In this document: piece by piece, positions 17 through 63,233 of the stretch
How the letters are laid out: the number at the start of each line of letters is the position of its first letter
Numbering within the stretch: the first letter of the stretch is position 1
Virus record (IMG/VR): IMGVR_UViG_3300043411_000942
Span: 62,001 to 126,000 of that record
Reading direction: 5' to 3' (one strand)
Length of the DNA: 64,000 nucleotides
The notes under the pieces: generated by a model
What the model was told of the DNA's origin: nothing
The model's input: the letters and a program-made list of their open reading frames with translations, nothing else
Databases searched by the model: none
Made by a program: the position numbers and the translations under genes

Positions 17-277
17 GTGATCTTCGAGCCAGGCTACTACTGGATCAAAGGTCATGGTGTCTGTAAGTACTCCCATGCCACTGGAGGGCTAGCTTACAAC
101 ACTGGGGAGCCTACTCACGTTGTGAACCCCTACCAGTTCGATTCAAACAAATTTGAAGGGAACCTCTACATCGAAACTTCGGACATCACCAGACCAGCGT
201 CTGAAAAAGAAGCCAAGTCGTACAAGGCAGCAGTTCGGAGAAAGCTCACGTCTTCAGGCGTGAAAAGAAAAAACTAG
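17..277 (+). CDS. hypothetical protein
   Basis: 86 aa ORF ending immediately at the first class-1 promoter. Confidence 0.6.
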   Translation: MIFEPGYYWIKGHGVCKYSHATGGLAYNTGEPTHVVNPYQFDSNKFEGNLYIETSDITRPASEKEAKSYKAAVRRKLTSSGVKRKN

Positions 278-305
278 TTAAGGCCGTTACCCCAAAGGAC
301 GTAGG
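277..305 (+). promoter_or_regulatory. class-1 promoter GTTAAG-N17-CGTAGG
   Basis: ATG 313. Other + copies: 1373, 1702, 2020, 3171, 4359, 5196, 6828, 7432, 8996, 10084, 11161, 11834, 12129, 13753, 14059, 15700, 18642, 39895, 45213. Confidence 0.85.
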
Positions 306-312
306 TCTCTAC

Positions 313-426
313 ATGAACTACGATGACTGGAAAGCGACGGACCCCCGAGACACTGACCGCGACTATGACCTCGAAGGAGAGGAAGACCACTTCGAGATCG
401 AAAAAGACTACTCTGGTGAAGACTGA
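313..426 (+). CDS. small acidic protein (37 aa, MNYDDWKATDPRD...), not in ORF track
   Basis: ATG 7 nt after CGTAGG of promoter 277-305; open to TGA 424-426. Confidence 0.6.
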   Translation: MNYDDWKATDPRDTDRDYDLEGEEDHFEIEKDYSGED

Positions 427-530
427 TTCCGTGTGACCGTGTACTCCTGGGATACCCAACAGGTGACGGCTCTGCCTTAGGGAGCGTTAACAACGTCTAT
501 TCAACCAACCCGGCACGGGTGTAGAGTATT

Positions 531-1112
531 GGGTAAGTGCTGACACCTCGGAAAGACGGGGAAATTTCTTAACTCCTACTGGCGAGACACGTTAAGTGTC
601 GGGACACATGTGAACTAGAGTCACAGAACCAACGTAGGAGCTGTAGTCAACCTAGCAAGTCAAAACGTAGACTCCGGAAGGTAGCCAACCCTCTTCGGAC
701 GAGTCAGACCCAAGTAGGATGGCGAAGGGTAAAGCCGAGAGGCGAGCAAAACCCATGCCCCGAATTTGCTGCGGGGCGCTTTTCTTACTTTGAGAGTTGA
801 AATGCACATCCGTGACTGGGTTGCCGTAACCTGAGGGTCTCATCCTTCCTCTAGCCTCGGCAATTCGGAGCACACCCACAGGCCTGATGAACCTGGACGG
901 TTCGGTTCAAACCCGTGTGTAATGGGACACTAGCTCCCACGTCATGTGCTAGGGTTACGGGTGTGCTTTTCAACTTTCCAAGTAACTACAAGCACTTTTC
1001 TTCTTCATAGGTCTGGAAGCCAAGCGGTCTAGTTTGAGGAGACTGATCCTCTCTGTGAACTAGGACGTGGGGTCAACGCACGGGAAAACCTAGCCCTGCT
1101 TCCAGACCTATG
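531..1112 (+). ncRNA. candidate large structured ncRNA (possibly two domains, 534-997 and 1006-1112)
   Basis: No credible ORF. Stems: 535-541/991-997, 573-579/634-640, 712-719/783-790, 795-817/953-975 (23 positions, with G-U), 1006-1020/1098-1112 (15 bp perfect). GAAA/GAGA/UUCG loops. GGTGTA motif at 518-523. Confidence 0.65.
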
Positions 1113-1353
1113 GGGTAGGGGACTTCTTAACTACCGAGGATAAAAATGAGAGATATAGTTGATTGGACCGAAATGACACCAGAAGAGGAGGCGGAGTTGG
1201 CGGACAGAAGAATGAGGACGTGCCAGGCATGCATGGGCTTTGGTGGCCACGGAATCTCCGGCACAGCTCAGTGGTCCGAATGCTCCGCATGTGGCGGTAC
1301 TGGGGCACGACGCTCATCTAAGCACGGGAAAACCTAGCCCTGCTTTCAGACTT
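1078..1353 (+). repeat. 32-nt direct repeat (1078-1109 and 1322-1353, 2 mismatches) flanking a one-gene insert
   Basis: GCACGGGAAAACCTAGCCCTGCTT(C/T)CAGAC(C/T)T read at both positions. Confidence 0.9.
1146..1337 (+). CDS. small DnaJ-type zinc-finger protein
   Basis: CQACMGFGG and CSACGGTG (CxxCxGxG) repeats. Confidence 0.7.
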   Translation: MRDIVDWTEMTPEEEAELADRRMRTCQACMGFGGHGISGTAQWSECSACGGTGARRSSKHGKT

Positions 1354-1372
1354 GGTTCTTTTGTCTATTGTA

Positions 1373-1401
1373 GTTAAAGACACCTCCAAGCCGTACGTAG
1401 G
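1373..1401 (+). promoter_or_regulatory. class-1 promoter
   Basis: GTTAAA-N17-CGTAGG-N7-ATG. Confidence 0.85.
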
Positions 1402-1408
1402 TCTCTAT

Positions 1409-1651
1409 ATGAACGACTCAAGCTACCTCGCTCTCTGGCAAGCTGGAAACAACGAGGGGGACGGCTACATCCCCGACTTCGGAGGCGATGACGTGCATGC
1501 AGCTGCCGCAGCCTATGAGGGTGAGGGGGCCACCGTGATCCACTGGTCTACCACGGACGATGACGTGACGGTTCTGGACTACTACGGTGTAATGATCGCC
1601 ATTGGGGACGCTCACGGTCCTTGGGCTGTCACGATCGACCGGGGTATCTAA
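1409..1651 (+). CDS. hypothetical protein
   Basis: start moved to ATG 1409 behind promoter 1373-1401. Confidence 0.7.
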   Translation: MNDSSYLALWQAGNNEGDGYIPDFGGDDVHAAAAAYEGEGATVIHWSTTDDDVTVLDYYGVMIAIGDAHGPWAVTIDRGI

Positions 1652-1737
1652 CCATGCGCTACATTGGAAAACGACGAAAGCTTCGTCAGTGGGTGGTTTG
1701 AGTTAAACTTCCTAGACAACTCTTCGTAGGTACAGAC

Positions 1738-2001
1738 ATGAACACCTCCTCTAAGATTACGGTTGGCTCCTCGGTGAAGATCCTGAAGGGCTGTAAGGCT
1801 AGGAACGTTTCCGTGGGGTCTGCTACGATCAAGGACGTGACCGAGCTGGGGAAGGATTACGGTTACTCCGTACGGGTCCTCCTCGCCTACAATGGACGGC
1901 TTATCGCTTTCTACGCGAGGCACCCTAACCGGCTGGCTGACCCTCAGGTTAGCCTCAACGATGGGAACCCCCTCCACAACATCAAGATTTGCCTTTCTTA
2001 A
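1738..2001 (+). CDS. hypothetical beta-rich (SH3-like?) protein
   Basis: ATG behind promoter 1702-1730. Confidence 0.7.
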   Translation: MNTSSKITVGSSVKILKGCKARNVSVGSATIKDVTELGKDYGYSVRVLLAYNGRLIAFYARHPNRLADPQVSLNDGNPLHNIKICLS

Positions 2002-3165: not shown

Positions 3166-3206
3166 AACCAGTTAAGAGCCACTCTCAAGAAAACGTAGGT
3201 CTCAAT

Positions 3207-3431
3207 ATGAGCAATCGTAAAGACTCCCAAGGCTTCGATACGAAGGTGACCTTTCTGGGAAAGGGTTACGGGGTTCGAGTTCTCCGAAACGGCAAAGTCG
3301 TGTCGGAAGCTACGGCACCTACAAAACTTCAAATCGGTTCGACCATCAAAGACATGCTCCGCATGATCGACAAGTGCGGGAACCCAAGCGAGATGGCTAG
3401 CTCCTCTCGCGACCGCAGAAAGACTGCTTGA
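3207..3431 (+). CDS. hypothetical protein
   Basis: start moved to ATG 3207 behind promoter 3171-3199. Confidence 0.7.
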   Translation: MSNRKDSQGFDTKVTFLGKGYGVRVLRNGKVVSEATAPTKLQIGSTIKDMLRMIDKCGNPSEMASSSRDRRKTA

Positions 3432-4132
3432 TGCTCTTTAGAGATATCCCGCCATTCACTAGGTCATCCAGCTACATGGTCAACGTGGGGCTGGATTACC
3501 TGTCTGCTCACTACGCTCGGTACGTCATACATTACGGGCTCGACGTGAATCCAGACTTCCAACGCAACTATGTCTGGACTCCGGAGCAAAAGACTCGATT
3601 CATGGAGTACTTCCTTCGAGGGGGTACGTCAGGGTTGGACATCTACGTGAACTCCCCAACGTTCCACGGTGGGAACTTGGGTCCAGAACACCCTGAGTCC
3701 TGGTGTGTTCTCGTGGACGGCAAGCAACGTCTGGACGCGGCCCTTGGGTTCCTCAACAACGAGGTCCCTGTTTTTGACGGACACTATTTCCGAGACTTCA
3801 CGGACAAGCCAAGGTTCACTCAGTGCAACTTTCGCTGGCATGTCAATGACTTGAAGACTCGCGAGGAGTGTCTTCAGTGGTACCTGGACCTCAACTCTGG
3901 TGGGACGGTCCACCAGCCTGAGGAGCTAGACAAGGTACGAGAGCTTCTGGCTAAGAATGAGCCGTACGCTAAGCCGTCTCACGAAACCATCCTAAGTCAG
4001 TCTCGACTCGACCGTCCATCGGTCCAGGAAGAGGTCCAACTGATTGCTGTAGAGCAGGAGAAGTACCGCCTCACGGCTGAAACGCGAAAGCAGAGCCCAC
4101 CTCCCATCAAAAAGAAAAGTAACAAGAGGTGA
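3428..4132 (+). CDS. DUF262 / ParB-like NTPase domain protein
   Basis: PDFQRNYVWT and VLVDGKQRL motifs. Confidence 0.85.
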   Translation: MMLFRDIPPFTRSSSYMVNVGLDYLSAHYARYVIHYGLDVNPDFQRNYVWTPEQKTRFMEYFLRGGTSGLDIYVNSPTFHGGNLGPEHPESWCVLVDGKQRLDAALGFLNNEVPVFDGHYFRDFTDKPRFTQCNFRWHVNDLKTREECLQWYLDLNSGGTVHQPEELDKVRELLAKNEPYAKPSHETILSQSRLDRPSVQEEVQLIAVEQEKYRLTAETRKQSPPPIKKKSNKR

Positions 4133-4359
4133 ACCAAGTTATGTATAGGAGCCTCAGAGGTCGTCTATGTGAGGCACAGAAAGAAGTTAAAGCGCTGAAG
4201 GCGGAGCTTCTGGCCCTACGGGAGGTAGTATGGGAGGTCGTAAACGACATGGCTCCCTCCGAGGCCTATGTCTACTACACTCCGCAGAGGGAAGCCCTTC
4301 GGGCCGCTCTCGTCAAGGCACCTAAGTCCACTGACCCAGCAAATAATAACGCAGGTTAG
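4129..4359 (+). CDS. hypothetical coiled-coil protein
   Basis: GTGA overlap with upstream gene; EVKALKAE heptad. Confidence 0.55.
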   Translation: MNQVMYRSLRGRLCEAQKEVKALKAELLALREVVWEVVNDMAPSEAYVYYTPQREALRAALVKAPKSTDPANNNAG

Positions 4360-4387
4360 TTAAGTCTCCACTCGCTAGTTACGTAGG
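4359..4387 (+). promoter_or_regulatory. class-1 promoter
   Basis: GTTAAG-N17-CGTAGG-N7-ATG. Confidence 0.85.
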
Positions 4388-4394
4388 GTCTAGC

Positions 4395-4592
4395 ATGAGA
4401 GTTAAAAACCAGATCGTCGAGTGTGAGCTGACAGAGGAAGACATGGCTGTTCTGAGGGACATGGCCTTCGAGTTCAAACGACGAGCTTGGAGGCTTCTCA
4501 AGAACTCAAACCCTGACTTGAGTGGGACGGCTACCGAGTCGGTAGCCACGCACCTATGTAACGACCTGATCAAAGAGGTTCAATTCCGATGA
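4395..4592 (+). CDS. hypothetical protein
   Basis: ATG behind promoter 4359-4387. Confidence 0.7.
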   Translation: MRVKNQIVECELTEEDMAVLRDMAFEFKRRAWRLLKNSNPDLSGTATESVATHLCNDLIKEVQFR

Positions 4593-4876
4593 GCACCTCA
4601 AAGTTTCGAGTCTGCGTTAAGCTACACAAGACTGAAGAGCGAAAGTCTTACTTCGAGGGTCCCTGGAGGAAGTCTCCTGAAGCTGCCCTTGACTCCTTTA
4701 CGAAGGTGCTTGTAAAGCACTCCTTGCAGGAGAAGACCCTCTACGAGCCATTCATTATTGAGTGGGATGGGGTTAAGGCTTCAGTTCGAAGTCGGGGTGT
4801 TGCCTCCGGTCTTACCGATCGTGGGTTGGTTGTAGACTCCCCACTGAGCAGCAACGAAATGAAAACGGTCCCGTGA
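4589..4876 (+). CDS. hypothetical protein
   Basis: ATGA coupling. Confidence 0.6.
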   Translation: MSTSKFRVCVKLHKTEERKSYFEGPWRKSPEAALDSFTKVLVKHSLQEKTLYEPFIIEWDGVKASVRSRGVASGLTDRGLVVDSPLSSNEMKTVP

Positions 4877-5193
4877 AAGTACGTACAGTCAACCACATCC
4901 TAAATGACTTGCTGGCAGCTCTCATTGCTGCTCAATGGTCTGGAGGTGCCTACCCAGGACCAAGGTGTTACTGCCATGGGGATGGTTCACCTTGCTGCCC
5001 CTCCTGTGAGGCACTCGCAACGAGGTGTGCAATCGATCCTAGACGTACCGCAACTGAGCCGAACGAGCACAAGCCAAACTGTGCCTACATGGCCCTCATG
5101 CGGGAAGCTCAAGCCTATCTGGATGTTGAGAACACTCTCGCGAAGGAGAGAGGCGAAGAGCCGATCGAGGAATCTCATCTGAATTGGACTTAG
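4873..5193 (+). CDS. hypothetical Cys/His-rich protein
   Basis: GTGA coupling; CxCH...CCxxC. Confidence 0.55.
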   Translation: MKVRTVNHILNDLLAALIAAQWSGGAYPGPRCYCHGDGSPCCPSCEALATRCAIDPRRTATEPNEHKPNCAYMALMREAQAYLDVENTLAKERGEEPIEESHLNWT

Positions 5194-5231
5194 GGGTTAA
5201 GTCTAACCCTCAGACCTACGTAGGTGTTTAC

Positions 5232-5387
5232 ATGGGCAGCATCAAAACCTTCCGAGTTGAGTTCACTGTTGAGACCCGTAAGGGAAGCACCAAGCGGGTC
5301 GCTCTTGAGGGCAAGCGCCTTGAGCCCCTCCTGAAGAAGATCGCGCAGCGTGACGGATACAACGTCCTGACAAGCTACGAAGTGTAG
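5232..5387 (+). CDS. hypothetical protein
   Basis: ATG 5232 behind promoter 5196-5224. Confidence 0.65.
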   Translation: MGSIKTFRVEFTVETRKGSTKRVALEGKRLEPLLKKIAQRDGYNVLTSYEV

Positions 5388-5402
5388 AAAGAAGAAGACC
5401 AA

Positions 5403-5684: not shown

Positions 5685-5687
5685 GAA

Positions 5688-6108: not shown

Positions 6109-6124
6109 ATCCACATCAGGATCC

Positions 6125-6832: not shown

Positions 6833-6856
6833 ACCTCCACCACCCAGTTACGTAGG
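6828..6856 (+). promoter_or_regulatory. class-1 promoter whose -35 contains the upstream TAA stop
   Basis: GTTAAA-N17-CGTAGG-N7-ATG. Confidence 0.85.
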
Positions 6857-6863
6857 GTTCTAC

Positions 6864-10841: not shown

Positions 10842-11165
10842 ATGTCAAAAAAGAACGTGAGGCAGAAGTTCAGGGACTTGGTCTTCACTCGGGACAAGCA
10901 TGTTTGCCGGGTCTGTAGGGCCTTAGGTGAGCTAGATGCTCACCACATTACAGATCGCAACCTGATGCCGGGTGGGGGCTATGTGCCGGGGAACGGAATT
11001 TCCCTGTGCAAAGATTGTCACTTAAAGGCAGAGCATTTCCACTCAACAGGTGAGAGCTTGCCAGGGTTTTCTCCAGAGGACCTGTACCAACTAATCGGTT
11101 CAAGTTATGCCGAAGCTCTTGAAGCTTCGAGACTCCATGAGAGATTTAAGCACCTCTCTGGTTAA
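10842..11165 (+). CDS. HNH endonuclease
   Basis: RDKHVCRVC, LDAHHI, NGISLCKDCH. Confidence 0.88.
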   Translation: MSKKNVRQKFRDLVFTRDKHVCRVCRALGELDAHHITDRNLMPGGGYVPGNGISLCKDCHLKAEHFHSTGESLPGFSPEDLYQLIGSSYAEALEASRLHERFKHLSG

Positions 11166-11195
11166 GCCGCACTAGCAGAATCCGTAAGGCTTTAC

Positions 11196-12127: not shown

Positions 12128-12164
12128 GGTTAAGGACCCCTTCAACCCCTACGTAGAGTGGGAC

Positions 12165-21835: not shown

Positions 21836-21843
21836 ACAATCCC

Positions 21844-22104
21844 CTACGGGTTCGAGGTGATCTTGCTTAACTTTTCTTTCAGCTCTTGAGCAGAAATGTC
21901 GAGTTCGATCAAGCTGCTAAAGAGTGCGAGAACTTCGAGTGTCTTAGAGTGACTCAAAGTAACCTCGTCGAAGGCTGTCTTTGTCGTAACCGCTAGGTGC
22001 TTCCACCTCTCGGTCTCGGATCGCCAGTAGCTAACTTGGGCGCTTTTGTACATGTAGGTCAGCCCGATAGTTACAAGCAAACCAGCGAAAATCAAAACTA
22101 CCAC
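21844..22104 (-). CDS. N-terminal TM protein
   Basis: hydrophobic N-terminus. Confidence 0.55.
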   Translation of the reverse strand: MVVLIFAGLLVTIGLTYMYKSAQVSYWRSETERWKHLAVTTKTAFDEVTLSHSKTLEVLALFSSLIELDISAQELKEKLSKITSNP

Positions 22105-29922: not shown

Positions 29923-29958
29923 GTGAAGTCCTACGTAGCGGAGTTGTGGGGATTTAAC

Positions 29959-35115: not shown

Positions 35116-35150
35116 GTCTAGCCCTACGGAAGTAGAGAGAGTAAGCTTAA

Positions 35151-36311
35151 CTAAAATCTCGCCTGTTGGGCCAGGTCGATACACAGGCCGTCTATTCTGT
35201 GCAGGTCTGGCTTCTTAGGGAGCTTCGACACCTTAGCCAGCTCGGTTAGCTCCACGTCTTGCTTCGCTGCCCACTCGACAAGCTCGTAATAGTTCCAAGC
35301 CCCTGCTCGAATGCGTAGCAGGTCCTCAGCGTCCGGACGTCGCACAACAACCTTACCTTCAGTGAGGATTTCGCGGCACATTCGTAGGAGTCTCACTAGG
35401 TGCATGGCATGTTTCGTGTCGTACCCAAACTGCTCTTCTAGTTTCGCACGATCTGGATTGCGATTCTTCTTCCAATCTTGAAATTGCTGCCACTCTCGCA
35501 GTTTACTCGTGTAGCGTCGCTCCAAGTCGAGCAACTCAATGAAGTTCGTTGAAAACCCAAGGGAGTTCGCTGCTGCGTTCCAGGTCTTCTCTTCGACGTC
35601 TTTCCAGGACCACTTGGTGATCTCTAGCAGCCTACGGTAGAACTCGTCCTTAATGGATTGCCGGTTGGCTGGACCAAGCTCCTCTAGCTCGTGCCAATTC
35701 CACTCGTCCATGCGCTTATTGATTGTAGCGGAGGCAGCTGCAAGCTGATCTGCCGGGATAAGCGTGTGCTCAGGTAGATTAAACTCTGCTCGTGTTGGAG
35801 GCGCTACAGGAGGAGTCTTAATCCATCTGTAGTGAGTGTTGATTCTCTTGAGTTGTTGAGTCGCATACCCACTGAACGTGTGCTTTGCACGCTGAGAGAG
35901 GAACAGCTCGCGACTCCCCAGGAGGGTTGTCCCCAATGGGGACACGACCAGGTGGTCACTTTCGTCCGTGTAGAGGATCTCAAGAACGTTTGGATTACAC
36001 TCAGCCGCAAGTTTCATGAACTTGCGGAGTTCGAAGATCGTCAAGTCAGGCTCGGACTGAGTGACCTGCTCTACCGTGTTCAAAAACCCTAGGTAGTACT
36101 CACGCGGAGCGATCATGACTCCGCGTAGATCAAGATCGCTTGTAGGGAGGTTCGTCCCATAGGCGTGACTACCGTGACGAGTCAGGTAGATTGTCCGACT
36201 CGGTACCCACGATAAGTTACCTGAATACACGGGCTTCCAATCAAAGAGAAGCGTACTCTTGACTGGGATCAAGTCACTCCTTGGTGTATCCATGGAACCA
36301 CCCTTCTCCAC
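35151..36311 (-). CDS. Pol-beta-superfamily nucleotidyltransferase (Nuc-transf/YcgL-like)
   Basis: HGSHAYGTNLPTSDLDLRGV, NPNVLEIL, YDTKHAMHLVRLL. Confidence 0.9.
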   Translation of the reverse strand: MEKGGSMDTPRSDLIPVKSTLLFDWKPVYSGNLSWVPSRTIYLTRHGSHAYGTNLPTSDLDLRGVMIAPREYYLGFLNTVEQVTQSEPDLTIFELRKFMKLAAECNPNVLEILYTDESDHLVVSPLGTTLLGSRELFLSQRAKHTFSGYATQQLKRINTHYRWIKTPPVAPPTRAEFNLPEHTLIPADQLAAASATINKRMDEWNWHELEELGPANRQSIKDEFYRRLLEITKWSWKDVEEKTWNAAANSLGFSTNFIELLDLERRYTSKLREWQQFQDWKKNRNPDRAKLEEQFGYDTKHAMHLVRLLRMCREILTEGKVVVRRPDAEDLLRIRAGAWNYYELVEWAAKQDVELTELAKVSKLPKKPDLHRIDGLCIDLAQQARF

Positions 36312-39559: not shown

Positions 39560-39899
39560 GCTAAGTACCCCAATCGACCTACCAGACTTTACACATCTGT
39601 CCGTGCCGGAGCTAACGTCCCTCCGGAATCACATTGCGATGCAGACAAAGGAGGCCAGAAAGAAGGCCAACGTAGCCATAGCTAAAACAGGCTCACCTAC
39701 CCTCAAGTCTCTTTGGATGAACTACGTTAGCCTACGTTCGGATACGAGTGCTGAGGATCGTCGAGCCACTAGTAAGCCTTTCTACAATGAGCTTTTGCGG
39801 CACCCGATAGCCTTCCTTGCTTACTCCTACGTGAACTCTCTCCTGATCCTGGATCAAGCGATCGTTCAGGACATGCTACGTAGGTCAAAAGTAGGTTAA
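39549..39899 (+). CDS. hypothetical protein
   Basis: TAA stop inside next promoter -35. Confidence 0.55.
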   Translation: MTDELSTPIDLPDFTHLSVPELTSLRNHIAMQTKEARKKANVAIAKTGSPTLKSLWMNYVSLRSDTSAEDRRATSKPFYNELLRHPIAFLAYSYVNSLLILDQAIVQDMLRRSKVG

Positions 39900-39932
39900 A
39901 CCTTCCACCAAAGATTACGTAGGGGTTAGCAT

Positions 39933-44176: not shown

Positions 44177-44215
44177 ATGGTACACCCTACGAAAGGTAAC
44201 GGTGTAACTTAACCG

Positions 44216-45195: not shown

Positions 45196-45248
45196 CCTAA
45201 CCTTATACACCGGTTAAGTTTGCAGCGAGGCCTTACGTAAGGGTACAC

Positions 45249-58457: not shown

Positions 58458-59282
58458 TTAGACTTCAGCTCTCTCGTTCTTGACGTCGAAGTGCTTGCGT
58501 AGTACCGACTTGATTTGGTCCTTGTACTTCAACCAAGCTGGGTGCGACATCGGGTTGTTCTTTAGGAACGGGATCATTTGGTCTCGAACAATCTCGGCGT
58601 CCGTATACCCCTGTAGGAGCAAGTCAAAGTAAAGGTCCAGGTCTGGAGTGACCCTGGGGTTTACCTTCCTAGCCAATTCATCTCGGATGTTGTCCAAGTC
58701 ACTCTCTAGAAGGTACTTGTCGAGGTGGTCCCAAGCCCCTGGGTCCTCAATGACCCTCTCAACGCCTTCCAGGTCCGTCATGGAATCCGTGATACTCTTG
58801 TCTTCATCCCCTCTGGTGTCATGCCTAAACTGGTCGATAGCTAGCATGTTGAGGGCCGTAAGGATATAGCTTTCTGCTCTCTTTAGAGGTTGACCTGATA
58901 GGTTCCGTAGGGAGTCAGGCTTAGCTAGAAACTTGAGCATTAGCTCCGTCATCAGGTCTTCTGCTCGGTTCGGATCGCGATGCTTCATGAGTAGCATCTT
59001 GTAAGCCTTCGAGCCAAAGTTGGCGCCGTAACCACTAGGGATCTTACGGTCCATCTCTCGTGCGTTCTGAGGCTTGAAGTTCTCAGCAGGTTGATCCTTG
59101 ATGGGTGGAAGTCCCTCCACCCCGTTCATCAAGAATAACCCGTAGATAACTCTCCCGAACCCAGCAGCGGGCCCAGCTGCTAGCTTCACTAGAAGGTTAG
59201 CCAGCCTATATCCCCATGGAAGGCTGGCATATACCTTACGACCTAACTCACTAGCGACTCTTACTAAGGCGTGTGTATCCAT
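58458..59282 (-). CDS. ECF-like RNA polymerase sigma factor with N-terminal RVAS motif
   Basis: AEDLMTELMLKF..SYILTALNMLAIDQFR (sigma2-like); LLLQGYTDAEI (sigma4-like). Confidence 0.65.
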   Translation of the reverse strand: MDTHALVRVASELGRKVYASLPWGYRLANLLVKLAAGPAAGFGRVIYGLFLMNGVEGLPPIKDQPAENFKPQNAREMDRKIPSGYGANFGSKAYKMLLMKHRDPNRAEDLMTELMLKFLAKPDSLRNLSGQPLKRAESYILTALNMLAIDQFRHDTRGDEDKSITDSMTDLEGVERVIEDPGAWDHLDKYLLESDLDNIRDELARKVNPRVTPDLDLYFDLLLQGYTDAEIVRDQMIPFLKNNPMSHPAWLKYKDQIKSVLRKHFDVKNERAEV

Positions 59283-59308: not shown

Positions 59309-60472
59309 CTACATCCCCCGAGAGACCATCCGCTGAGTGCCCTTTACGGACAACCCAATGGTGGTTGCAATCTCATTGAGATTGCAACCTTCGCTGAGAA
59401 GCTTAAGGATCTCAGCCTCACGCTCCTGGTTCCCCTCCGCAGACCAGCCCAGAGCCTTGCGGCTAGACTTACCAGAGGCAATCAGCTTCACAGTTTGAGT
59501 AAGGTCCACAATGACCTCTTGCTGGCATCCATGAGGGTCGACGATAGCACTCTCCCATGAGACCTCTTCGCTACCCTCTCTTGGGGTGACAACAATCTCC
59601 TTGTGCCTACGAGACTTGGTTCGCAACCAGTTCACATAGATATTGAAGACAGCTCGGTACAAGTACTGCTTGAAGGTACCACGAGTCCTAGGAAGGTGAG
59701 GAGACCCAGAGGTATCGTAATCAACGACCTTCCGACCTTTGATTCGGAACTCCTCCCGAATCGCCTCGTACTTCTCAATGTCTGCCTTAGAGTAAGTAGC
59801 CTCAGAGGACATGCAATCCCCACTAATAGGAGATGGCGCCCACTGACCCTTTAACCTAGGGCAACAAAAGAGGCACAAGGTGTGCACTTCCGAGAGGGTA
59901 GGTTCAAGACTACTCACTTCCGCATTACCCGTACGGTACAAGTAGAAGTTTTGGAAACGAGAAACCACCCAAAAGACTTGACGGGTCTTAGGGATCCCGA
60001 ACTCCCGCTGAAGGTTCTCTCGTTCCTCCTCTTGAAGGTCCTTGGACATCAACCTAAGCTTGCTAGCATAGGAATTCATGTCGGTACCACAAGAAGAGCA
60101 TACTCCGTGGTCCCTACTCTCCACTTCCTCTAGAAGAGCCTTAGAGGGACGCTCTACCTTCAATCCCTTAGGAAAGACTCCCAAGACGTATCGGTATACC
60201 GCCATCTTGAAAGCACTTTCTTGCATCTTCAGGTAAGCAGCAGCTGAGGAAGCTGTCACAACCTCAGGCAACCTTACCGAGTAGGAGTTGTCATACTTCC
60301 TTAGGAAGTCGGCTTCAAACAACTTGAGCCAGACATGCTGGATGATATCCGCCGAGTTATCAGCTACCTTGTTAGCCTTTCGGATCGCACTACTCACAAA
60401 GGTGGAGTAATGCTTTACGAAGTCGTTGTTGTTCTTAGGTACGTAGTCTTCATCAGTCTTTTTAACAAGCAT
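59309..60472 (-). CDS. ECF-like sigma factor with a large insertion inside sigma2
   Basis: DIIQHVWLKLF ... FKQYLYRAVFNIYVNWLRT ... EILKLLSEGCNLNEIATTIGLS; own class-1 promoter 60480-60508. Confidence 0.72.
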   Translation of the reverse strand: MLVKKTDEDYVPKNNNDFVKHYSTFVSSAIRKANKVADNSADIIQHVWLKLFEADFLRKYDNSYSVRLPEVVTASSAAAYLKMQESAFKMAVYRYVLGVFPKGLKVERPSKALLEEVESRDHGVCSSCGTDMNSYASKLRLMSKDLQEEERENLQREFGIPKTRQVFWVVSRFQNFYLYRTGNAEVSSLEPTLSEVHTLCLFCCPRLKGQWAPSPISGDCMSSEATYSKADIEKYEAIREEFRIKGRKVVDYDTSGSPHLPRTRGTFKQYLYRAVFNIYVNWLRTKSRRHKEIVVTPREGSEEVSWESAIVDPHGCQQEVIVDLTQTVKLIASGKSSRKALGWSAEGNQEREAEILKLLSEGCNLNEIATTIGLSVKGTQRMVSRGM

Positions 60473-60479: not shown

Positions 60480-60508
60480 CTTACGGAAGTTGGAGGTGAA
60501 CACTTAAC
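60480..60508 (-). promoter_or_regulatory. class-1 promoter of the sigma-factor gene
   Basis: GTTAAG-N17-CGTAAG-N7-ATG. Confidence 0.85.
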
Positions 60509-60522
60509 CGAAAACTTGATCC

Positions 60523-60540
60523 CACACACACACACACACA
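60523..60540. repeat. (CA)9 dinucleotide tract
   Basis: read directly. Confidence 0.9.
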
Positions 60541-61109
60541 TGACTACTAGGTAGGATTGAGGTACTGAGGAGGGCTGCTCTATCTAGGGGGGTAGGGTTA
60601 GGATGACTGGTTAGGTTGAAAGGGATGTTCGTATCAGGATGATTGGTTTTTGAGTTAGTTTCGCTACACTATACCAAAAAGAATAAGATCTGATCGGTAT
60701 AGGAGGGGTTAAGGATGGTGGTCCTAGGTAGTAACCCCTATCTGAGTCTACTGAGTCCTTGAGGGACTCTTTGGTCGGAGTGAGTTATGAAGTACCTACC
60801 TCAATGCTCACTTACTTACGGGATCTGCCTAACTTTCCACAACTTCATGTTAGACTGGAGCGACTCATCTTTCAGAGCCTCCTCTCCAAGGAGAGGACCT
60901 TAAGAGACCTTCTAGAGGAAAGAAGCTGACCCCTCTAGACTAACCCACACAGGCTTTTCAAGTACTGATCAGGAAGTGCTGTCACTACTTGTCCTACTTT
61001 CTAGTAGGTATGGAACCCTATAACCCATCCCTCGGTCACTGAGGTTGACCCCTCTCGTATAGACCTGAGAAACCCCTAGCGCAAGTCATTTTGTTCTGGT
61101 ACCCTCTCA

Positions 61110-61451: not shown

Positions 61452-61729
61452 GTATAGGTAAGCTCACTGATGCGCTACCTCTTGCGATCTGGTTACCTCG
61501 TAGTAGCTACGATGTTTACCGGGGGAGCCCATCGGAGATCATCCAAGAACTTACTGGGAACAAGTCTACTTCCATGCGGCAAGCCATCAAGAAGGTCACG
61601 AAAAGTCTTGAGGTGACTCGTCGAGTGAAGCTGGAACTTCCCTGGGGTGAGTCCGATGACGTCCTTGCTACTCTTTTGGTTCACGCTATGCTTCAGTTGA
61701 AAATCAGTCAACCCGTACCATCCGCCTAA
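61439..61729 (+). CDS. hypothetical protein
   Basis: coupled ORF. Confidence 0.55.
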   Translation: MSDLSIGKLTDALPLAIWLPRSSYDVYRGSPSEIIQELTGNKSTSMRQAIKKVTKSLEVTRRVKLELPWGESDDVLATLLVHAMLQLKISQPVPSA

Positions 61730-61737
61730 GAGGCTTC

Positions 61738-61923
61738 ATGAAACTAGTCAATGCGATTGCTCTCTCCGTTGTTTTTCTTGCCTTGGTAGGTTCCTGCGTC
61801 GCAGGCGTCTACCTCAAGGTCCAGGGTAAACTTACTTGGGCTCCCTTTGGGATCTGGATGCTAACCGCAGGGTGCCTGCTTGCCATGGTTGGTTACATGA
61901 TTCGAGGGTTGAACCAAAAGTGA
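61738..61923 (+). CDS. small 2-TM membrane protein
   Basis: two hydrophobic helices. Confidence 0.65.
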   Translation: MKLVNAIALSVVFLALVGSCVAGVYLKVQGKLTWAPFGIWMLTAGCLLAMVGYMIRGLNQK

Positions 61924-61927
61924 TTGT

Positions 61928-61966
61928 TCGGTTGCCTCTACCTCCTAACTTGGTAGAGGCAACCGA
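61928..61966. terminator. hairpin terminator between convergent genes
   Basis: TCGGTTGCCTCTACC/GGTAGAGGCAACCGA. Confidence 0.8.
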
Positions 61967-61972
61967 CAGAGC

Positions 61973-62749
61973 TTAGGTTCGGTTGACGGCAGCTTCGATG
62001 CTAGCTTTGAGTGCTGCAAGGAGGTCTGTCATAGGAGCCTGAGCCTTCACTGGGGTGTCGATAGCAAGACCTTCCTGCTTCTTGGCTACAGCCTCCTTCA
62101 CCCGTTTGGCGTAGTTGTCCTCGTACTTCTGAGGCTCGAAGGTCTTGGTAGCCAGAGCTTCCACGAGCATGCAAGCAACCTTCTCTTCTGCTTCCATCAC
62201 TTGAGCTTTGGCAGCAGGGACCTCCCCGAAGTCTCGCACTTCGTTGGCGTAGAACATTTGGTGCATCACCAGACCACCCTCGTAGGGGCGGACAAGCACC
62301 AAGTGCTCTCGCCCTCGGTTGGACCACTGAGCCACAGCGATCTTGCCTTGCTTCTTCATGACCTGACTAAGCAGGTAGTAAGACTTGTCACCACCCTTGT
62401 TGGGACCCAGGTAGTAGGACTTCTCGACCTGGAAGACGTTGAAGGCTTCTGCGGGGATAAACTCCTTTATCTCCATGCTGTTTGCGTTCTCGCTATCGAG
62501 AACAGACAGCTCTTCCTTGCTGAAGCGAACAAGGGTTCCGCCCTTCTCGACTTCGTAACCTCGCCCACATTCGGAGTACTCCACAGGGGCTCCCGTGATG
62601 GAGTCGGTATACTTCTGCTTCACCTTGTTGCCAGCAGGAGTGACCATGCACAGGCTTACGGTCTCTGCACTTGCAGAGAGGTAGATTTTGACCGGAACGG
62701 AAACCAGCCCGAAGGACAGGGTTGCACTAGCGATGGATCGAATGCTCAT
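61973..62749 (-). CDS. ku: Ku DNA end-binding protein
   Basis: ATLSFGLVSVPVKIY, RGYEVEKG, EKSYYLGP, KSYYLL, HLVLVRP, DLLAALKAS. Confidence 0.95.
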   Translation of the reverse strand: MSIRSIASATLSFGLVSVPVKIYLSASAETVSLCMVTPAGNKVKQKYTDSITGAPVEYSECGRGYEVEKGGTLVRFSKEELSVLDSENANSMEIKEFIPAEAFNVFQVEKSYYLGPNKGGDKSYYLLSQVMKKQGKIAVAQWSNRGREHLVLVRPYEGGLVMHQMFYANEVRDFGEVPAAKAQVMEAEEKVACMLVEALATKTFEPQKYEDNYAKRVKEAVAKKQEGLAIDTPVKAQAPMTDLLAALKASIEAAVNRT

Positions 62750-62756
62750 ATTATCT

Positions 62757-62785
62757 CTTACGGAAAGGTTTAGGTTCGACTTAAC
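62757..62785 (-). promoter_or_regulatory. class-1 promoter of ku
   Basis: GTTAAG-N17-CGTAAG-N7-ATG. Confidence 0.85.
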
Positions 62786-62806
62786 GTGAATCTGCGGAAC
62801 CCAGGG

Positions 62807-63082
62807 TCACAGGTCTTCACGGATACTTTTGCGATCCCAGTTGTACTTGACAGCAAGTACAACCGCCTCTTGTAGAAGCTCGGAGTTCTTGAGAGTGTTG
62901 TCCAACCCCAGAACCTGAGGTGGGCTAGAGACAAAGCAAAATGCCTCAATAGCCCTTTCGTAGGACTCCCATCGGTAACTCAGGCAGAGACAGTTGATGA
63001 TTTGAACAAGAAGCTTTCGACGCTCCTTGTTCCCACCCTCCGCGTTAACCCAGGCTACCCAAACGCCTTCCAAGTGACTCAT
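62807..63082 (-). CDS. hypothetical protein
   Basis: ATG behind promoter 63090-63118. Confidence 0.65.
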   Translation of the reverse strand: MSHLEGVWVAWVNAEGGNKERRKLLVQIINCLCLSYRWESYERAIEAFCFVSSPPQVLGLDNTLKNSELLQEAVVLAVKYNWDRKSIREDL

Positions 63083-63233
63083 AGAGTACTATACGGAAAG
63101 ACCTAGGTTCGCCTTAACCCTTACCGACCGTACTCATACACAAAAACAGGGATGTCCCGAAGCTGCTCCTGAATGATTGGTTCAATTACACTCCAATCTA
63201 TCCTCCAATCGAGTTATAGGTAAGTGATTGGCA

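What the first reader, a model, noticed from the sequence alone, without database searches (positions are those of the whole stretch)
277..63118. 39 copies of a fixed-geometry ECF-type promoter driving apparently leaderless genes
Seen: GTTAA(G/A/C)-N17 (sometimes N16)-CGTA(G/A)G on both strands, always oriented with the downstream gene. In most copies ATG lies 9 nt after CGTA (range 7-11), leaving little or no leader. Established: ECF sigma factors use -35 elements containing AA(C) and -10 elements containing CGT, with about 16-17 nt spacing. Inference: a phage regulon of leaderless mRNAs, plausibly read by one of the two sigma-like proteins in this window; the gene at 59309-60472 carries the motif itself, suggesting autoregulation. 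The AGG within -10 could alternatively act as a weak SD.
Basis: partly seen in the sequence, partly recalled or inferred. Interest (0 to 1): 0.78.

Follow-up and report, generated by a model that had tools for sequence, protein, structure and literature searches.

The report
Huge-phage sigma regulon of leaderless genes
An uncultivated huge phage carries dozens of copies of one rigid two-part promoter. The promoter is placed so that transcription should begin on the ATG of the gene behind it. The phage also encodes two divergent ECF-like sigma factors that most likely read this promoter, so this is a new example of a known way for a phage to take over transcription.

Summary
GTTAAV-N16/17-CGTARG occurs 32 times against 0.09 expected. 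A looser form gives 37 credible copies, all pointing the same way as the gene downstream.

- **Geometry.** ATG lies exactly 9 nt after CGTA in 25 copies, and a pyrimidine precedes that position in 32 of 37.
- **It is a promoter, not a Shine-Dalgarno (SD) site.** Five copies have no ATG there. They carry a purine followed by a true SD and a later ATG. Just outside the window the same motif sits 5-17 nt ahead of tRNA genes.
- **Conservation.** In a related strain GTTAA shows 0/95 changes and CGTARG 3/114, while the spacer shows 35/340.
- **Sigma genes.** The 387-aa protein at 59309-60472 belongs to a divergent sigma-70/ECF-like family (51 of 88 relatives hit Sigma70_r2) and has an HNH-like insertion. 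The neighbouring 274-aa protein is also sigma-like.
- **Relatives.** Phages of 50-64% GC keep this gene pair and a variant promoter, GGTTGA-N17-CGTY-N8-start, in front of the sigma gene. One host-type TTGACA promoter lies further upstream.

No transcription starts could be read from public RNA data. The host is unknown, and which sigma reads the motif is inferred. I rate it a new variant of a known kind, of moderate to high interest.

The parts
277..305 (+). promoter copy, leaderless
   Evidence: GTTAAG-N17-CGTAGG; ATG at 313, 9 nt after CGTA; 37-aa ORF
1373..1401 (+). promoter copy, leaderless
   Evidence: GTTAAA-N17-CGTAGG; ATG 1409; 80 aa
1702..1730 (+). promoter copy, leaderless
   Evidence: GTTAAA-N17-CGTAGG; ATG 1738; 87 aa
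2020..2048 (+). promoter copy, leadered
   Evidence: G at the predicted start 2056; 46-nt leader with AAAGGA, then ATG 2102 (61 aa)
3171..3199 (+). promoter copy, leaderless
   Evidence: ATG 3207; 74 aa
4359..4387 (+). promoter copy, leaderless; also a strain-mosaic boundary
   Evidence: ATG 4395; 65 aa; other strains lack 4117-4358, with the joint directly in front of GTTAAG
5196..5224 (+). promoter copy, leaderless
   Evidence: ATG 5232; 51 aa
6828..6856 (+). promoter copy, leaderless
   Evidence: ATG 6864; 87 aa
7432..7460 (+). promoter copy, leaderless
   Evidence: ATG 7468; 65 aa
8996..9023 (+). promoter copy (N16), leaderless
   Evidence: ATG 9031; 73 aa
10084..10112 (+). promoter copy, leadered; its unit also holds tRNA-Lys
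   Evidence: A at the predicted start 10120, followed at once by AGAGG and ATG 10133 (70 aa); tRNA-Lys 10353-10426 follows
11161..11188 (+). promoter copy (N16), leaderless
   Evidence: CGTAAG; ATG 11196; 120 aa
11834..11862 (+). promoter copy; first ATG gives only 14 aa
   Evidence: ATG 11870; possibly a mini-ORF, or a leader for the gene at 11930
12129..12157 (+). promoter copy, leaderless
   Evidence: CGTAGA; ATG 12165; 61 aa
13753..13781 (+). promoter copy, leaderless
   Evidence: ATG 13789; 61 aa
14059..14087 (+). promoter copy, leaderless
   Evidence: ATG 14095; 78 aa
15700..15728 (+). promoter copy, ATG 7 nt after CGTA
   Evidence: ATG 15734; 92 aa
18642..18669 (+). promoter copy (N16), leaderless
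   Evidence: ATG 18677; 106 aa
20779..20807 (-). promoter copy, leaderless
   Evidence: CGTAGT; ATG 20771; 58 aa
21243..21271 (-). promoter copy, weak case
   Evidence: ATG 6 nt after CGTA; 25-aa ORF only
21843..21871 (-). promoter copy, leaderless
   Evidence: ATG 21835; 66 aa
22871..22899 (-). promoter copy, leaderless
   Evidence: CGTACT; ATG 22863; 107 aa
24048..24075 (-). promoter copy (N16), ATG 8 nt after CGTA
   Evidence: ATG 24041; 115 aa
26502..26530 (-). promoter copy, leadered
   Evidence: the predicted start 26494 begins AAGGAG, then 7 nt, then ATG (64 aa)
29930..29958 (-). promoter copy, leaderless
   Evidence: ATG 29922; 122 aa
31173..31201 (-). promoter copy, ATG 8 nt after CGTA
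   Evidence: ATG 31166; 51 aa
32617..32645 (-). promoter copy, leadered, in front of the RNA ligase gene
   Evidence: A at the predicted start 32609; AAAGG; ATG 32593 (234 aa, Pfam RNA_ligase 4.7e-28)
35123..35151 (-). promoter copy, leaderless
   Evidence: ATG 35115; 242 aa
36455..36483 (-). promoter copy, leaderless
   Evidence: ATG 36447; 57 aa
37531..37559 (-). promoter copy, probably leadered
   Evidence: the first ATG gives 12 aa; GAGGA plus GTG 37501 follows (80 aa)
39895..39923 (+). promoter copy, 2-nt leader
   Evidence: A at the predicted start 39931, then T-ATG 39933; 247 aa metallophosphoesterase
44186..44213 (-). promoter copy (N16), 2-nt leader
   Evidence: A at the predicted start 44178, ATG 44176; 87 aa
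44844..44872 (-). promoter copy, leadered
   Evidence: the predicted start 44836 begins GAAAGAGGTG, ATG 44821 (115 aa)
45213..45241 (+). promoter copy, leaderless
   Evidence: CGTAAG; ATG 45249; 99 aa
60480..60508 (-). promoter copy in front of the sigma operon (autoregulatory copy)
   Evidence: GTTAAG-N17-CGTAAG; ATG 60472. Counterparts stand in front of the sigma gene in L046, L047, L051 and L052
62757..62785 (-). promoter copy, leaderless, in front of the Ku gene
   Evidence: ATG 62749; 258 aa; PHROG Ku-like 1.2e-44
63090..63118 (-). promoter copy, leaderless
   Evidence: CGTATA; ATG 63082; 91 aa
59309..60472 (-). 387-aa divergent ECF-like sigma factor with an HNH-like insertion (about residues 100-207)
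58458..59282 (-). 274-aa second sigma-like protein, next gene in the same operon
   Evidence: each line of evidence is weak, but all agree
60932..60961 (-). candidate host-type promoter TTGAAA-N18-TAGAGG upstream of the sigma operon
   Evidence: it is the positional analogue of the TTGACA-N18-TAAGNC element conserved in six relatives. Inference only.

Best explanation
The motif is a class of bacterial-type promoter belonging to an uncultivated huge phage. The window is bases 62001-126000 of a 232,937-bp metagenomic contig, and a related strain is represented by a 379,936-bp contig.

GTTAAR acts as the -35 element and (T)(A/C)CGTAGG as the -10 element, 17 bp apart. I propose that host core RNA polymerase reads this promoter when it carries a phage-encoded, highly divergent ECF-like sigma factor. 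The candidates are the 387-aa protein at 59309-60472, its 274-aa sigma-like neighbour at 58458-59282, or both together. Initiation would occur at the purine 9 nt downstream of CGTA.

In about two thirds of copies that purine is the A of an ATG, so the mRNA has no leader and no SD. In the other copies the transcript begins with a very short SD leader or with a tRNA precursor.

The sigma operon carries its own copy of the promoter, which would give positive feedback. It is probably first switched on from a single host-type promoter further upstream.

**Shown:** the motif, its geometry, its conservation, the sigma homology, and the link between sigma gene and promoter in relatives.
**Inferred:** the start site, which sigma reads the motif, the use of host core enzyme, and the order of the cascade.
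For: 1. **Enrichment and orientation.** 32 matches against 0.09 expected, all pointing with the genes.

2. **Rigid two-part shape with a free spacer.** In a related strain of 75-99% identity, GTTAA has 0/95 changes and CGTARG 3/114. The spacer has 35/340, the upstream flank 30/353 and the discriminator 12/133. Fisher's test of the hexamers against the non-coding remainder gives p = 1.9e-5.

3. **Start-site signature.** A pyrimidine precedes the proposed start in 32 of 37 copies and an A occupies it in 31 of 37. ATG is the only start codon at that position. It begins 21 of 21 promoter-proximal genes called, against 78 ATG, 31 GTG and 19 TTG for other genes.

4. **Internal controls.** Five copies lack ATG at that position. 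They have a purine there, immediately followed by AAGGAG, AGAGG or GAAAGAGGTG and then an ATG.

5. **tRNA genes.** The same motif precedes tRNA genes just right of the window. The predicted start at record base 127686 lies 5 nt before a tRNA-Tyr gene, and the one at 129281 lies 17 nt before another. Two further cases occur in strain contigs. This rules out a translational role for CGTAGG.

6. **The 387-aa protein is sigma-like.**
   - It has region 2.1/2.2, 2.3/2.4 and 4.2-like segments.
   - Its family has 273 cluster representatives at E <= 0.001.
   - 51 of 88 members hit Pfam Sigma70_r2, and a few hit r4, r4_2 or Sigma70_ECF.
   - An AlphaFold model with pLDDT 84 matches the sigma-2 domains of Mycobacterium tuberculosis SigH, E. 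coli SigE, AlgU and SigK at Z 6.5-8.

7. **The 274-aa protein is probably sigma-like.**
   - PHROG sigma family, E 5e-5.
   - Sigma70_r2, E 0.044.
   - Best PDB profile hit is an ECF RpoE, E 0.02.
   - hhalign against the 387-aa family, E 1.4e-4.
   - Its nearest protein-language-model clusters are all sigma-70/ECF.

8. **Relatives of 50-64% GC.**
   - They keep the gene order sigma, sigma-like, methyltransferase.
   - In L046, L047, L051 and L052 a GGTTGA-N17(19)-CGTY-N8 promoter stands in front of the sigma gene. Other copies start exactly on an ATG.

9. **Autoregulation.** It is the usual property by which ECF target promoters are identified (PMC7826278).

10. **Host-type promoter.** In all six relatives a single TTGACA-N18-TAAGNC promoter (TAATAC in one of them) lies upstream of the sigma gene.
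Against: - No transcription start has been measured. Contigs from public RNA runs span the promoters and look like DNA or read-through.
- The window's own 387-aa protein reaches no Pfam threshold. Its sigma assignment rests on its family and on a predicted fold with middling Z-scores.
- The -35 element lacks the ECF hallmark AAC.
- If only the phage sigma reads the motif, its first synthesis needs another promoter. The candidate in the window (TTGAAA-N18-TAGAGG) is weak.
- The gene downstream of the sigma is not a recognisable anti-sigma.
- About 130 kb of the contig was not read, so a phage-encoded polymerase cannot be excluded.
- The host is unknown, so its ability to translate leaderless mRNA is unknown.
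- Most pieces of the second strain used for the conservation test were retrieved with the motif itself. That favours conserved copies to some extent.
Confidence: 0.65

Rival explanations
1. The motif is a promoter, but a host sigma factor reads it: a cellular ECF or another alternative sigma, or an unusual housekeeping sigma. The phage sigma-like proteins would then serve another promoter class, for example the GGTGTAR class.
For: - The sigma operon sits under the motif itself, so some pre-existing factor has to read it first, or another promoter has to.
- A second leaderless motif, GGTGTAR-N8-ATG, is enriched in the window (8 against 1.4 expected) and in relatives (11 against 0.75). That leaves an unassigned promoter class for an unassigned sigma.
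- The host is unknown.
Against: - The -35 element changes from GTTAAR in the window to GGTTGA in relatives, together with the predicted recognition helix of the phage sigma.
- The motif stands in front of the phage sigma gene in five lineages, which is the ECF autoregulation signature.
- A separate host-type TTGACA promoter is present upstream and can supply the first sigma.
- Scans of 185,579 genomes found no cellular relative of this sigma.
Confidence: 0.17
2. The motif is read by a polymerase the phage encodes itself, either single-subunit or a phiKZ-type multisubunit enzyme. It might be carried in the virion, and its gene would lie in the unread part of the genome.
For: - The motif is dense in a roughly 100-kb region of small genes, which looks like an early region.
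- Jumbo phages with their own polymerases exist (PMC7598289).
- About 130 kb of the contig was not inspected.
Against: - Two conserved blocks with a free 17-bp spacer, tolerating 16 bp, is the signature of sigma-2 and sigma-4 contacts. Known promoters of phage polymerases are contiguous or lack a -35 element.
- The genome encodes sigma-70 family proteins, which only make sense with a bacterial-type core enzyme.
- The CGT -10 core and the 9-nt distance to the start fit ECF geometry.
Confidence: 0.1
3. CGTAGG works at the RNA level as a weak Shine-Dalgarno site or a binding site for a phage protein. The real start would then lie upstream, for example just after GTTAAR.
For: - AGG lies 7 nt before ATG, which is a workable SD distance.
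- The phage's internal genes use canonical GGAGG-type SD sites.
Against: - Copies precede tRNA genes by 5-25 nt.
- Five or more copies carry a separate real SD downstream of the motif.
- Relatives have CGTC or CGTT without AGG at the same place.
- There is no conserved element upstream of GTTAAR that could serve as its -35.
Confidence: 0.03
4. The motif is not a promoter but an operator, a recombination site or a packaging-related repeat.
For: Ends of homology blocks between strains fall near copies more often than expected: 6 of 36 against 1.8 expected.
Against: - Strict co-orientation with genes.
- Fixed distance to ATG.
- Positions at the heads of operons and of tRNA arrays.
- Presence in front of the sigma gene in relatives.

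Recombination at repeated promoters is a known by-product of having many identical copies.
Confidence: 0.03

Closest known systems
ECF (group 4) sigma factors and their promoters, e.g. Bacillus subtilis SigW (TGAAAC-N16-CGTA, from my own knowledge), E. coli SigE, Mycobacterium tuberculosis SigH and SigL
   Same: - The protein is built of sigma-2 plus sigma-4 domains.
- The promoter has two parts, with AA in the -35 element and CGT in the -10 element, 16-17 bp apart.
- The start lies about 9 nt after the CGT core.
- The sigma gene stands under its own promoter (PMC7826278).
   Different: - It is phage-encoded and too divergent to reach Pfam thresholds.
- About 200 residues are inserted within sigma-2, including a degenerate HNH zinc finger.
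- The -35 element is GTTAAR rather than GAAC.
- No recognisable anti-sigma follows. A second sigma-like gene follows instead.
- The regulon has more than 50 promoters rather than a handful.
phiEco32 gp36 with gp79, and its relative phage 7-11 (PMC12276001, PMC8948821)
   Same: - A phage-encoded ECF-like sigma redirects the host core enzyme to phage promoters.
- The gp36 chain (9m7y_F) aligns to the sigma-2 domain of the model at Z 6.2.
   Different: - The genome is small, with far fewer promoters, and fixed leaderless spacing is not a described feature there (from my own knowledge).
- gp36 needs the co-factor gp79, which has no detected homologue here.
Leaderless mRNAs of Actinobacteria and Deinococcus-Thermus, and lambda cI from PRM (PMC3898074, PMC3160421)
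   Same: The -10 element sits at a fixed short distance from the start codon, so transcription and translation start at the same base. No SD is used.
   Different: In those organisms the housekeeping sigma's TANNNT element is used, mostly without a -35 element. Here a phage-specific ECF-like promoter with a strong -35 element does the job. SD-led genes also coexist inside the same operons.
T4-type early promoter arrays and promoter-bounded gene cassettes (from my own knowledge)
   Same: - Dozens of near-identical strong promoters head small genes of unknown function.
- Mosaic boundaries between strains tend to fall at the promoters.
   Different: T4 early promoters are read by the host sigma-70 and are not leaderless.
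Tandem or split phage and bacterial sigma systems: SPO1 gp33/gp34, T4 gp55/gp33, B. subtilis SigO-RsoA (from my own knowledge), and mycobacteriophage D29 gp53-gp52 (bioRxiv 10.64898/2026.10.05.756390)
   Same: Two adjacent sigma-related genes are conserved as a pair.
   Different: Both proteins here appear to hold regions resembling sigma-2 and sigma-4. Nothing shows that they act together. The hit of the 274-aa protein to the gp53 family is not significant (E 0.042).

Membership tests
Sigma-70 family, ECF-like (387-aa protein, 59309-60472) | Sigma-2 domain (regions 2.1-2.4) | tested here: met
   - 51 of 88 family members hit Pfam Sigma70_r2, best E 1e-8.
- Model residues 13-296 align to about 80 residues of ECF sigma-2 domains at 2.7-2.9 A, Z 6.5-8.
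- Motif segments are visible in the alignment.
- The window protein on its own reaches no Pfam threshold.
Sigma-70 family, ECF-like (387-aa protein) | Sigma-4 helix-turn-helix domain | tested here: inconclusive
   - The profile hits LuxR/GerE-type HTH domains in the PDB at E 0.02-0.08.
- A few family members hit Sigma70_r4, r4_2 or GerE.
- The model has three C-terminal helices.
Sigma-70 family, ECF-like (387-aa protein) | No sigma-1.1 or sigma-3 domain | tested here: inconclusive
   No such domain was detected. About 200 extra residues are inserted within sigma-2. Part of the insertion is an HNH-like fold (ZRANB3 HNH: Foldseek probability 0.96, Z 7.6; hmmsearch E 0.011).
Sigma-70 family, ECF-like (387-aa protein) | Gene preceded by its own target promoter | tested here: met
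   The window copy is at 60480-60508. Variant copies stand in front of the orthologue in L046, L047, L051 and L052. This is evidence from sequence only.
Sigma-70 family, ECF-like (387-aa protein) | Co-transcribed anti-sigma factor | tested here: not met
   The next gene is itself sigma-like. No anti-sigma family was detected.
Sigma-70 family (274-aa protein, 58458-59282) | Significant match to sigma domains | tested here: inconclusive
   - PHROG sigma family, E 5e-5.
- Pfam Sigma70_r2, E 0.044, below the family cutoff.
- PDB profile hit to an ECF RpoE, E 0.02.
- hhalign against the 387-aa family, probability 52%, E 1.4e-4.
- Nearest atlas clusters are all sigma-70/ECF.

ECF-type promoter | -10 element with a CGT core, 16-17 bp from the -35 element | tested here: met
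   CGTA is invariant in the set by definition, and CGTAGG is conserved in a related strain. The spacer is N17 in 32 copies and N16 in 5.
ECF-type promoter | -35 element containing AAC | tested here: not met
   The -35 element is GTTAA followed by G (21), A (14) or C (2). AA is present, but C is rare. Relatives have GGTTGA.
ECF-type promoter | Dependence on the cognate sigma for initiation | not testable with these tools
   This needs in vitro transcription or infection transcriptomics.
Leaderless mRNA | The transcript's 5' end coincides with the start codon | not testable with these tools
   Public RNA runs gave only contigs that span the promoters.
Leaderless mRNA | Sequence signature: -10 element at a fixed distance, ATG only, no SD of its own | tested here: met
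   - ATG lies exactly 9 nt after CGTA in 25 of 37 copies.
- No GTG or TTG occurs at that place.
- A pyrimidine sits at -1 in 32 of 37 copies.
- Leadered copies start their SD at that same place.

Housekeeping sigma-70 promoter | TTGACA-N17-TATAAT-like hexamers | tested here: not met
   The motif does not resemble it. Consensus-like sites are not enriched in 1-20 kb (6 found against 10.7 expected).

The most novel reading that the evidence does not exclude
A clade of uncultivated huge phages runs a self-contained three-step transcription programme:

1. One host-type promoter fires a tandem pair of phage sigma genes, one of which carries an HNH zinc-finger insertion.
2. These sigmas re-aim the host core enzyme at more than 50 promoters built so that RNA synthesis begins on the AUG itself.
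3. The resulting leaderless mRNAs, together with phage tRNA arrays, a phage L7/L12 homologue, peptide deformylase and tRNA-repair enzymes, form a translation-takeover strategy. It would favour phage messages over SD-dependent host messages.
Probability: 0.2. Interest if true: 0.8.

Novelty: new variant of a known kind. Interest (0 to 1): 0.62.

Why it matters
- **A testable pairing.** Phage sigma factors are missing from the ECF classification because they are too divergent (PMC7826278). Here a large unannotated sigma family (273 clusters at 50% identity) is linked to a predicted target promoter. That pairing can be tested in vitro without cultivating the host.
- **Annotation of huge phages.** The promoter gives dozens of exact predicted transcription and translation starts in a genome with almost no annotated genes. 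It also marks a regulon of about 100 kb that includes tRNA arrays.
- **Leaderless expression.** If the starts are confirmed, this would be an unusually clean case of leaderless expression on a regulon-wide scale, driven by an alternative sigma. That bears on how leaderless translation is used outside Actinobacteria and Deinococcus-Thermus.
- **A possible tool.** An orthogonal sigma and promoter pair with a fixed start site could be useful in synthetic biology.

Tried and rejected
- **Known phages.** Megablast of 1-20 kb found nothing among 50,697 phage records. tblastn of the 387-aa protein found nothing, and tblastn of the 577-aa protein gave one weak, partial hit to an uncultured 485-kb phage.
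- **RNA evidence.** Twenty-four RNA-labelled runs hold parts of 1-6 kb. They look like wastewater total nucleic acid to me. The contigs laid down cross the promoters and show no clustered ends, so they give no information on starts.
- **First structure model.** A four-sequence alignment gave pLDDT 51 and the model was discarded. A second model from 88 sequences was used instead.
- **Direct searches with the 387-aa protein.** Pfam, PHROGs and PDB searches gave nothing.
- **Cellular relatives of the sigma.** The scan of genome contigs found none.
- **Host inference from peptide deformylase.** The nearest cellular homologues are 37-49% identical and spread over Myxococcota, Acidobacteriota, Verrucomicrobiota and other phyla, so the host stays unresolved.
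- **Rfam.** Only the tRNA was found in the window.
- **Weight-matrix scan.** It found no copies beyond the regex set.
- **SD reading of CGTAGG.** Rejected because of the copies in front of tRNA genes and the leadered copies.
- **Singleton matches.** The strict pattern hit 25 other viral contigs once each. None of these loci shows the dense clustering of copies seen on the two phage contigs, so they are chance matches.
- **The most distant relative.** L049/L050 (64% GC) shows no clear class-1 motif in the 21 kb read.

Full report

Yes. GTTAAV-N16/17-CGTARG occurs 32 times in the 64-kb window. One hundred dinucleotide-preserving shuffles gave a mean of 0.09 and never more than 1.

I discard two of these:
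- 23874(+), which has an aberrant spacer and no gene behind it.
- 60466(-), which lies inside a coding sequence.

The remaining 37 copies (20 on +, 17 on -) all point the same way as the open reading frame behind them.

Exact tallies:
- The spacer between GTTAAR and CGTA is 17 nt in 32 copies and 16 nt in 5.
- ATG lies exactly 9 nt after CGTA in 25 copies, 6-8 nt after in 5, and 11 nt after in 2.
- Five copies have no nearby ATG.

It reads R-GTTAA-R, about 15 unconstrained C-rich and G-poor bases, T-(A/C)-CGTAGG-(G/T), five free bases, a pyrimidine (32/37), then A (31/37) T G. Consensus sigma-70 promoters are not enriched in 1-20 kb (6 against 10.7 expected).

**2. Where the window comes from**

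The window is bases 62001-126000 of a 232,937-bp freshwater metagenome contig, which is also held in IMG/VR. A related strain is represented by a 379,936-bp viral contig. No record in the phage collection resembles it.

DNA of this phage or close strains appears in freshwater, groundwater, river, wastewater and activated-sludge runs. It is therefore an uncultivated huge phage.

A scan of 2.9 million viral contigs with a strict form of the motif found multiple matches only on these two contigs. Twenty-five other contigs had one match each, and none showed the dense clustering of copies seen on the two phage contigs.

On the pieces of the home contig that I could read, loose copies number 58 and run from about 39.8 kb to 131.1 kb. 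Strain contigs extend the series by roughly another 13 kb. The strict form found nothing in the rest of the contig.

**3. Promoter, not a translation signal**

Four independent observations bear on this.

- **(a) Conservation in a related strain.** I compared the 19 copies that could be aligned to the related strain, which is 75-99% identical and mosaic. GTTAA had 0 changes in 95 positions and CGTARG 3 in 114. The spacer had 35 in 340, the 20 nt upstream 30 in 353, the discriminator 12 in 133, and the coding sequence downstream 28 in 437. Fisher's test of the hexamers against the non-coding remainder gives p = 1.9e-5. One caveat applies. Most pieces of the second strain were fetched through the motif itself, which favours conserved copies somewhat. 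Each piece, however, holds several copies and needed only one match to be fetched.
- **(b) The five copies without ATG.** These are 2020, 10084, 26530, 32645 and 44872. Each has a purine exactly where the A of ATG would be. In four of them a genuine SD follows at once (AGAGG, AAGGAG, AAAGG, GAAAGAGGTG), and an ATG comes 13-19 nt later. The fifth, 2020, has a 46-nt leader. CGTAGG cannot be the SD of these genes, yet it is conserved there.
- **(c) Start codons.** ATG is the only start codon found at the fixed position. Among the genes called, all 21 promoter-proximal ones start with ATG, whereas other genes in the window use 78 ATG, 31 GTG and 19 TTG. These internal genes have ordinary GGAGG-type SD sites.
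- **(d) tRNA genes.** Just right of the window the same motif heads tRNA arrays. On the home contig the start predicted from the copy at record base 127650 is 127686, and a tRNA-Tyr gene begins at 127691. The copy at 129246 predicts 129281, and another tRNA-Tyr gene begins at 129298. Strain contigs add copies 12 and 25 nt ahead of tRNA-Gln genes. A signal in front of tRNA genes is a transcription signal.

**4. Geometry**

If the A of ATG is +1, CGTA occupies -13 to -10 and GTTAAR occupies -36 to -31, with its AA at -33/-32. This is the layout of promoters read by ECF sigma factors: a -35 element containing AA, a -10 element with a CGT core, 16-17 bp between them, and a start about 9 nt after the CGT core (established knowledge; see also PMC7826278).

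A pyrimidine at -1 and a purine at +1 is the usual preference of bacterial RNA polymerase. In two copies (39895 and 44213) the A at +1 is followed by T-ATG, which gives a 2-nt leader.

**5. The sigma genes**

*The 387-aa protein (59309-60472).* On its own it matches nothing in Pfam, PHROGs or the PDB. Aligned with three orthologues, it shows segments that read like sigma regions 2.1/2.2, 2.3/2.4 and 4.2.

- A profile search of 1.84 billion cluster representatives found 273 relatives at E <= 0.001. Many are 250-340 aa long and lack the middle part.
- Of 88 aligned members, 51 hit Pfam Sigma70_r2 (best E 1e-8). A few hit Sigma70_r4, r4_2, Sigma70_ECF or GerE.
- With this alignment the AlphaFold model reached pLDDT 84.
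- The best structural matches are the sigma-2 domains of ECF sigmas, with about 80 residues aligned at 2.7-2.9 A and Z 6.5-8. They include M. tuberculosis SigH, E. coli SigE (also in its complex with -10 DNA), AlgU, SigK and phiEco32 gp36. These Z-scores are middling, but sigma factors make up most of the best matches.
- Residues of roughly 100-207 form an HNH-like zinc finger (ZRANB3 HNH: probability 0.96, Z 7.6; hmmsearch E 0.011). Where the template has the catalytic Asp-His pair, the window protein has Ser-Arg (alignments). The insertion is therefore probably not a nuclease.

*The 274-aa protein (58458-59282).* It is the next gene in the operon and gives only weak signals, but all of them point to sigma:
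- PHROG sigma family, E 5e-5.
- Sigma70_r2, E 0.044.
- Best PDB profile hit is an ECF RpoE, E 0.02.
- hhalign against the 387-aa family, E 1.4e-4.
- All nearest named protein-language-model clusters are sigma-70/ECF.

**6. Relatives**

Homologues of the 274-aa protein at 40-57% identity, and of the 387-aa protein, led to contigs of 50-64% GC. One of these is 435 kb long. All keep the order sigma, sigma-like, DNA methyltransferase, and share neighbours such as peptide deformylase and dCTP deaminase.

None of them has GTTAA-N17-CGTA. They have GGTTGA-N17-CGTC/T instead, at 16 matches against 4.75 expected. At least three of those 16 lie inside a conserved coding sequence and are not promoters.

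- In L046, L047 and L051 (N17), and in L052 (N19), this element stands in front of the sigma gene. The position 8 nt after CGTY begins a 12-18-nt leader that carries a GAGGG-type SD.
- Other copies in the same loci put an ATG exactly at that position. These are L046 3979(-) and 4027(+), L047 4904(-) and 5110(+), and L051 5537(-).

So the architecture, the start position and the link to the sigma gene are conserved, while the hexamers differ. The window protein also differs from its relatives in the predicted sigma-4 recognition helix. That is consistent with co-variation of sigma and promoter, but it does not prove it.

**7. How the circuit may be started**

In all six relatives one perfect TTGACA, 18 bp, then TAAGNC (TAATAC in one) lies in the intergenic stretch upstream of the sigma gene. 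Where an ECF-type promoter was identified, it lies about 85-100 nt upstream of that promoter. No other copy of this form was found in those loci.

In the window the best analogue is TTGAAA-N18-TAGAGG at 60932-60961(-), inside a non-coding stretch of about 600 nt.

I infer a cascade: the host holoenzyme makes the first sigma transcripts, then the phage sigma amplifies its own synthesis and turns on the regulon. This step is inference only.

**8. What could not be shown**

- Public RNA-labelled runs that hold the sequence look like wastewater nucleic acid to me. Their contigs cross the promoters, and no clustered 5' ends were seen.
- The host is unresolved. The nearest cellular peptide deformylases are 37-49% identical and are spread over several phyla.
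- About 130 kb of the contig was not read, so a phage polymerase cannot be excluded.
- Which of the two sigma-like proteins reads the motif is open.
- A second motif, GGTGTAR followed 8 nt later by ATG, has the same GTA-to-ATG distance and no -35 element. It is enriched in the window (8 against 1.4) and in relatives (11 against 0.75). It is nearly unchanged across relatives, as is the 274-aa protein. One sigma per class is therefore an attractive but untested idea.

**9. Comparison with known systems, and verdict**

The motif works like an ECF sigma regulon with positive autoregulation. Among phages it is closest to phiEco32 gp36 (PMC12276001, PMC8948821).

It differs from these in five ways:
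- The sigma is very divergent and carries an HNH insertion.
- It is paired with a second sigma-like gene rather than an anti-sigma.
- The -35 element lacks AAC.
- The number of promoters is very large.
- The promoter is positioned so that most transcripts should begin on the start codon.

Leaderless genes with a -10 element at a fixed distance are well known in Actinobacteria and Deinococcus-Thermus (PMC3898074, PMC3160421). There the housekeeping sigma is used.

I rate this a new variant of a known kind. My confidence that the motif is a promoter is about 0.9, that most transcripts are leaderless about 0.8, and that a phage sigma reads it about 0.65-0.7.

Noticed in passing
window 14400(+), 16825(+), 20600(-), 34386(-), 38559(+), 44202(+), 46535(+); also L046, L047, L049, L051, L052: A second apparently leaderless motif: G-GTGTA(G/A), 8 nt, then ATG or GTG. 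It has the same GTA-to-start distance as the main motif but no GTTAA -35 element. Counts are 8 against 1.4 expected in the window and 11 against 0.75 in relatives. In several relatives it heads the methyltransferase and dCTP deaminase genes.
   Followed up: partly
L046 8695, L047 8686, L049 7965, L051 9853, L052 9860, L053 448; window 60932-60961(-): One host-type promoter, TTGACA-N18-TAAGNC, lies upstream of the sigma gene in every relative. Its last -10 base is C rather than the usual T. The window analogue, TTGAAA-N18-TAGAGG, is weaker and lies further away.
   Followed up: partly
window 59309-60472(-), residues about 100-207: The sigma protein carries an inserted HNH-like zinc-finger domain. 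The CxxC pairs are kept, but Ser-Arg stands where the HNH template has Asp-His. Shorter family members lack the insertion.
   Followed up: partly
record 126-140 kb, just right of the window (L003 1-5500; L134 6700-16300; L135 11300-13930): Large tRNA arrays: 14 tRNAs in L003, and 26 ARAGORN calls in L134 (Rfam confirms about 20 of them). Several arrays are headed by the same promoter motif. Nearby lie a ribosomal protein L7/L12 homologue, JAB, ThiF and VWA proteins, and HNH and LAGLIDADG genes.
   Followed up: partly
L135 13023-13340: A 105-aa protein made of a Cys-rich N-terminus plus a canonical sigma-70 region 4.2 (Pfam Sigma70_r4). It is preceded by the GGTGTAG motif, and is a third sigma-related gene in this phage.
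   Followed up: no
window 4117-4358, 4117-9505 and other block ends: Strains are mosaic. Other strains replace 4117-4358 with 32 nt, joining exactly in front of the promoter at 4359. The 380-kb strain lacks 4117-9505. Homology-block ends fall within 30 nt of a promoter 6 times in 36 against 1.8 expected (p 0.009). This suggests that the repeated promoters serve as recombination points.
   Followed up: partly
window 60521-60540(-): A (GT)n run lies about 12 nt upstream of the sigma operon's -35 element. It appears 6 nt shorter in the related strain.
   Followed up: no
window 31889-32593(-), 35151-36311(-), 42648-43880(-), 3428-4132(+), 61973-62749(-), 46516-47505(+), 48105-48635(+), 47507-48112(+): Gene content of the regulon region: RNA ligase, RlaP-type nucleotidyltransferase, CCA-adding enzyme, a GmrSD_N-like protein, Ku, ADP-ribosylglycohydrolase, peptide deformylase and dCTP deaminase.
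   Followed up: partly
window, promoter spacers (positions -16 to -7 relative to CGTA): The unconserved spacer is C-rich and G-poor on the coding strand, often as CCTCC or CCCTC.
   Followed up: no
record 126624(-)/126646(+), just right of the window; window 37559(-)/37576(+): Back-to-back divergent promoter copies whose -35 regions nearly abut.
   Followed up: no
L046, L047, L051, L052, between the TTGACA promoter and the sigma promoter: A conserved short inverted repeat (TCCGG...CCGGA, around GGCACCCGGA) lies just upstream of the ECF-type -35 element. Its role is unknown.
   Followed up: no
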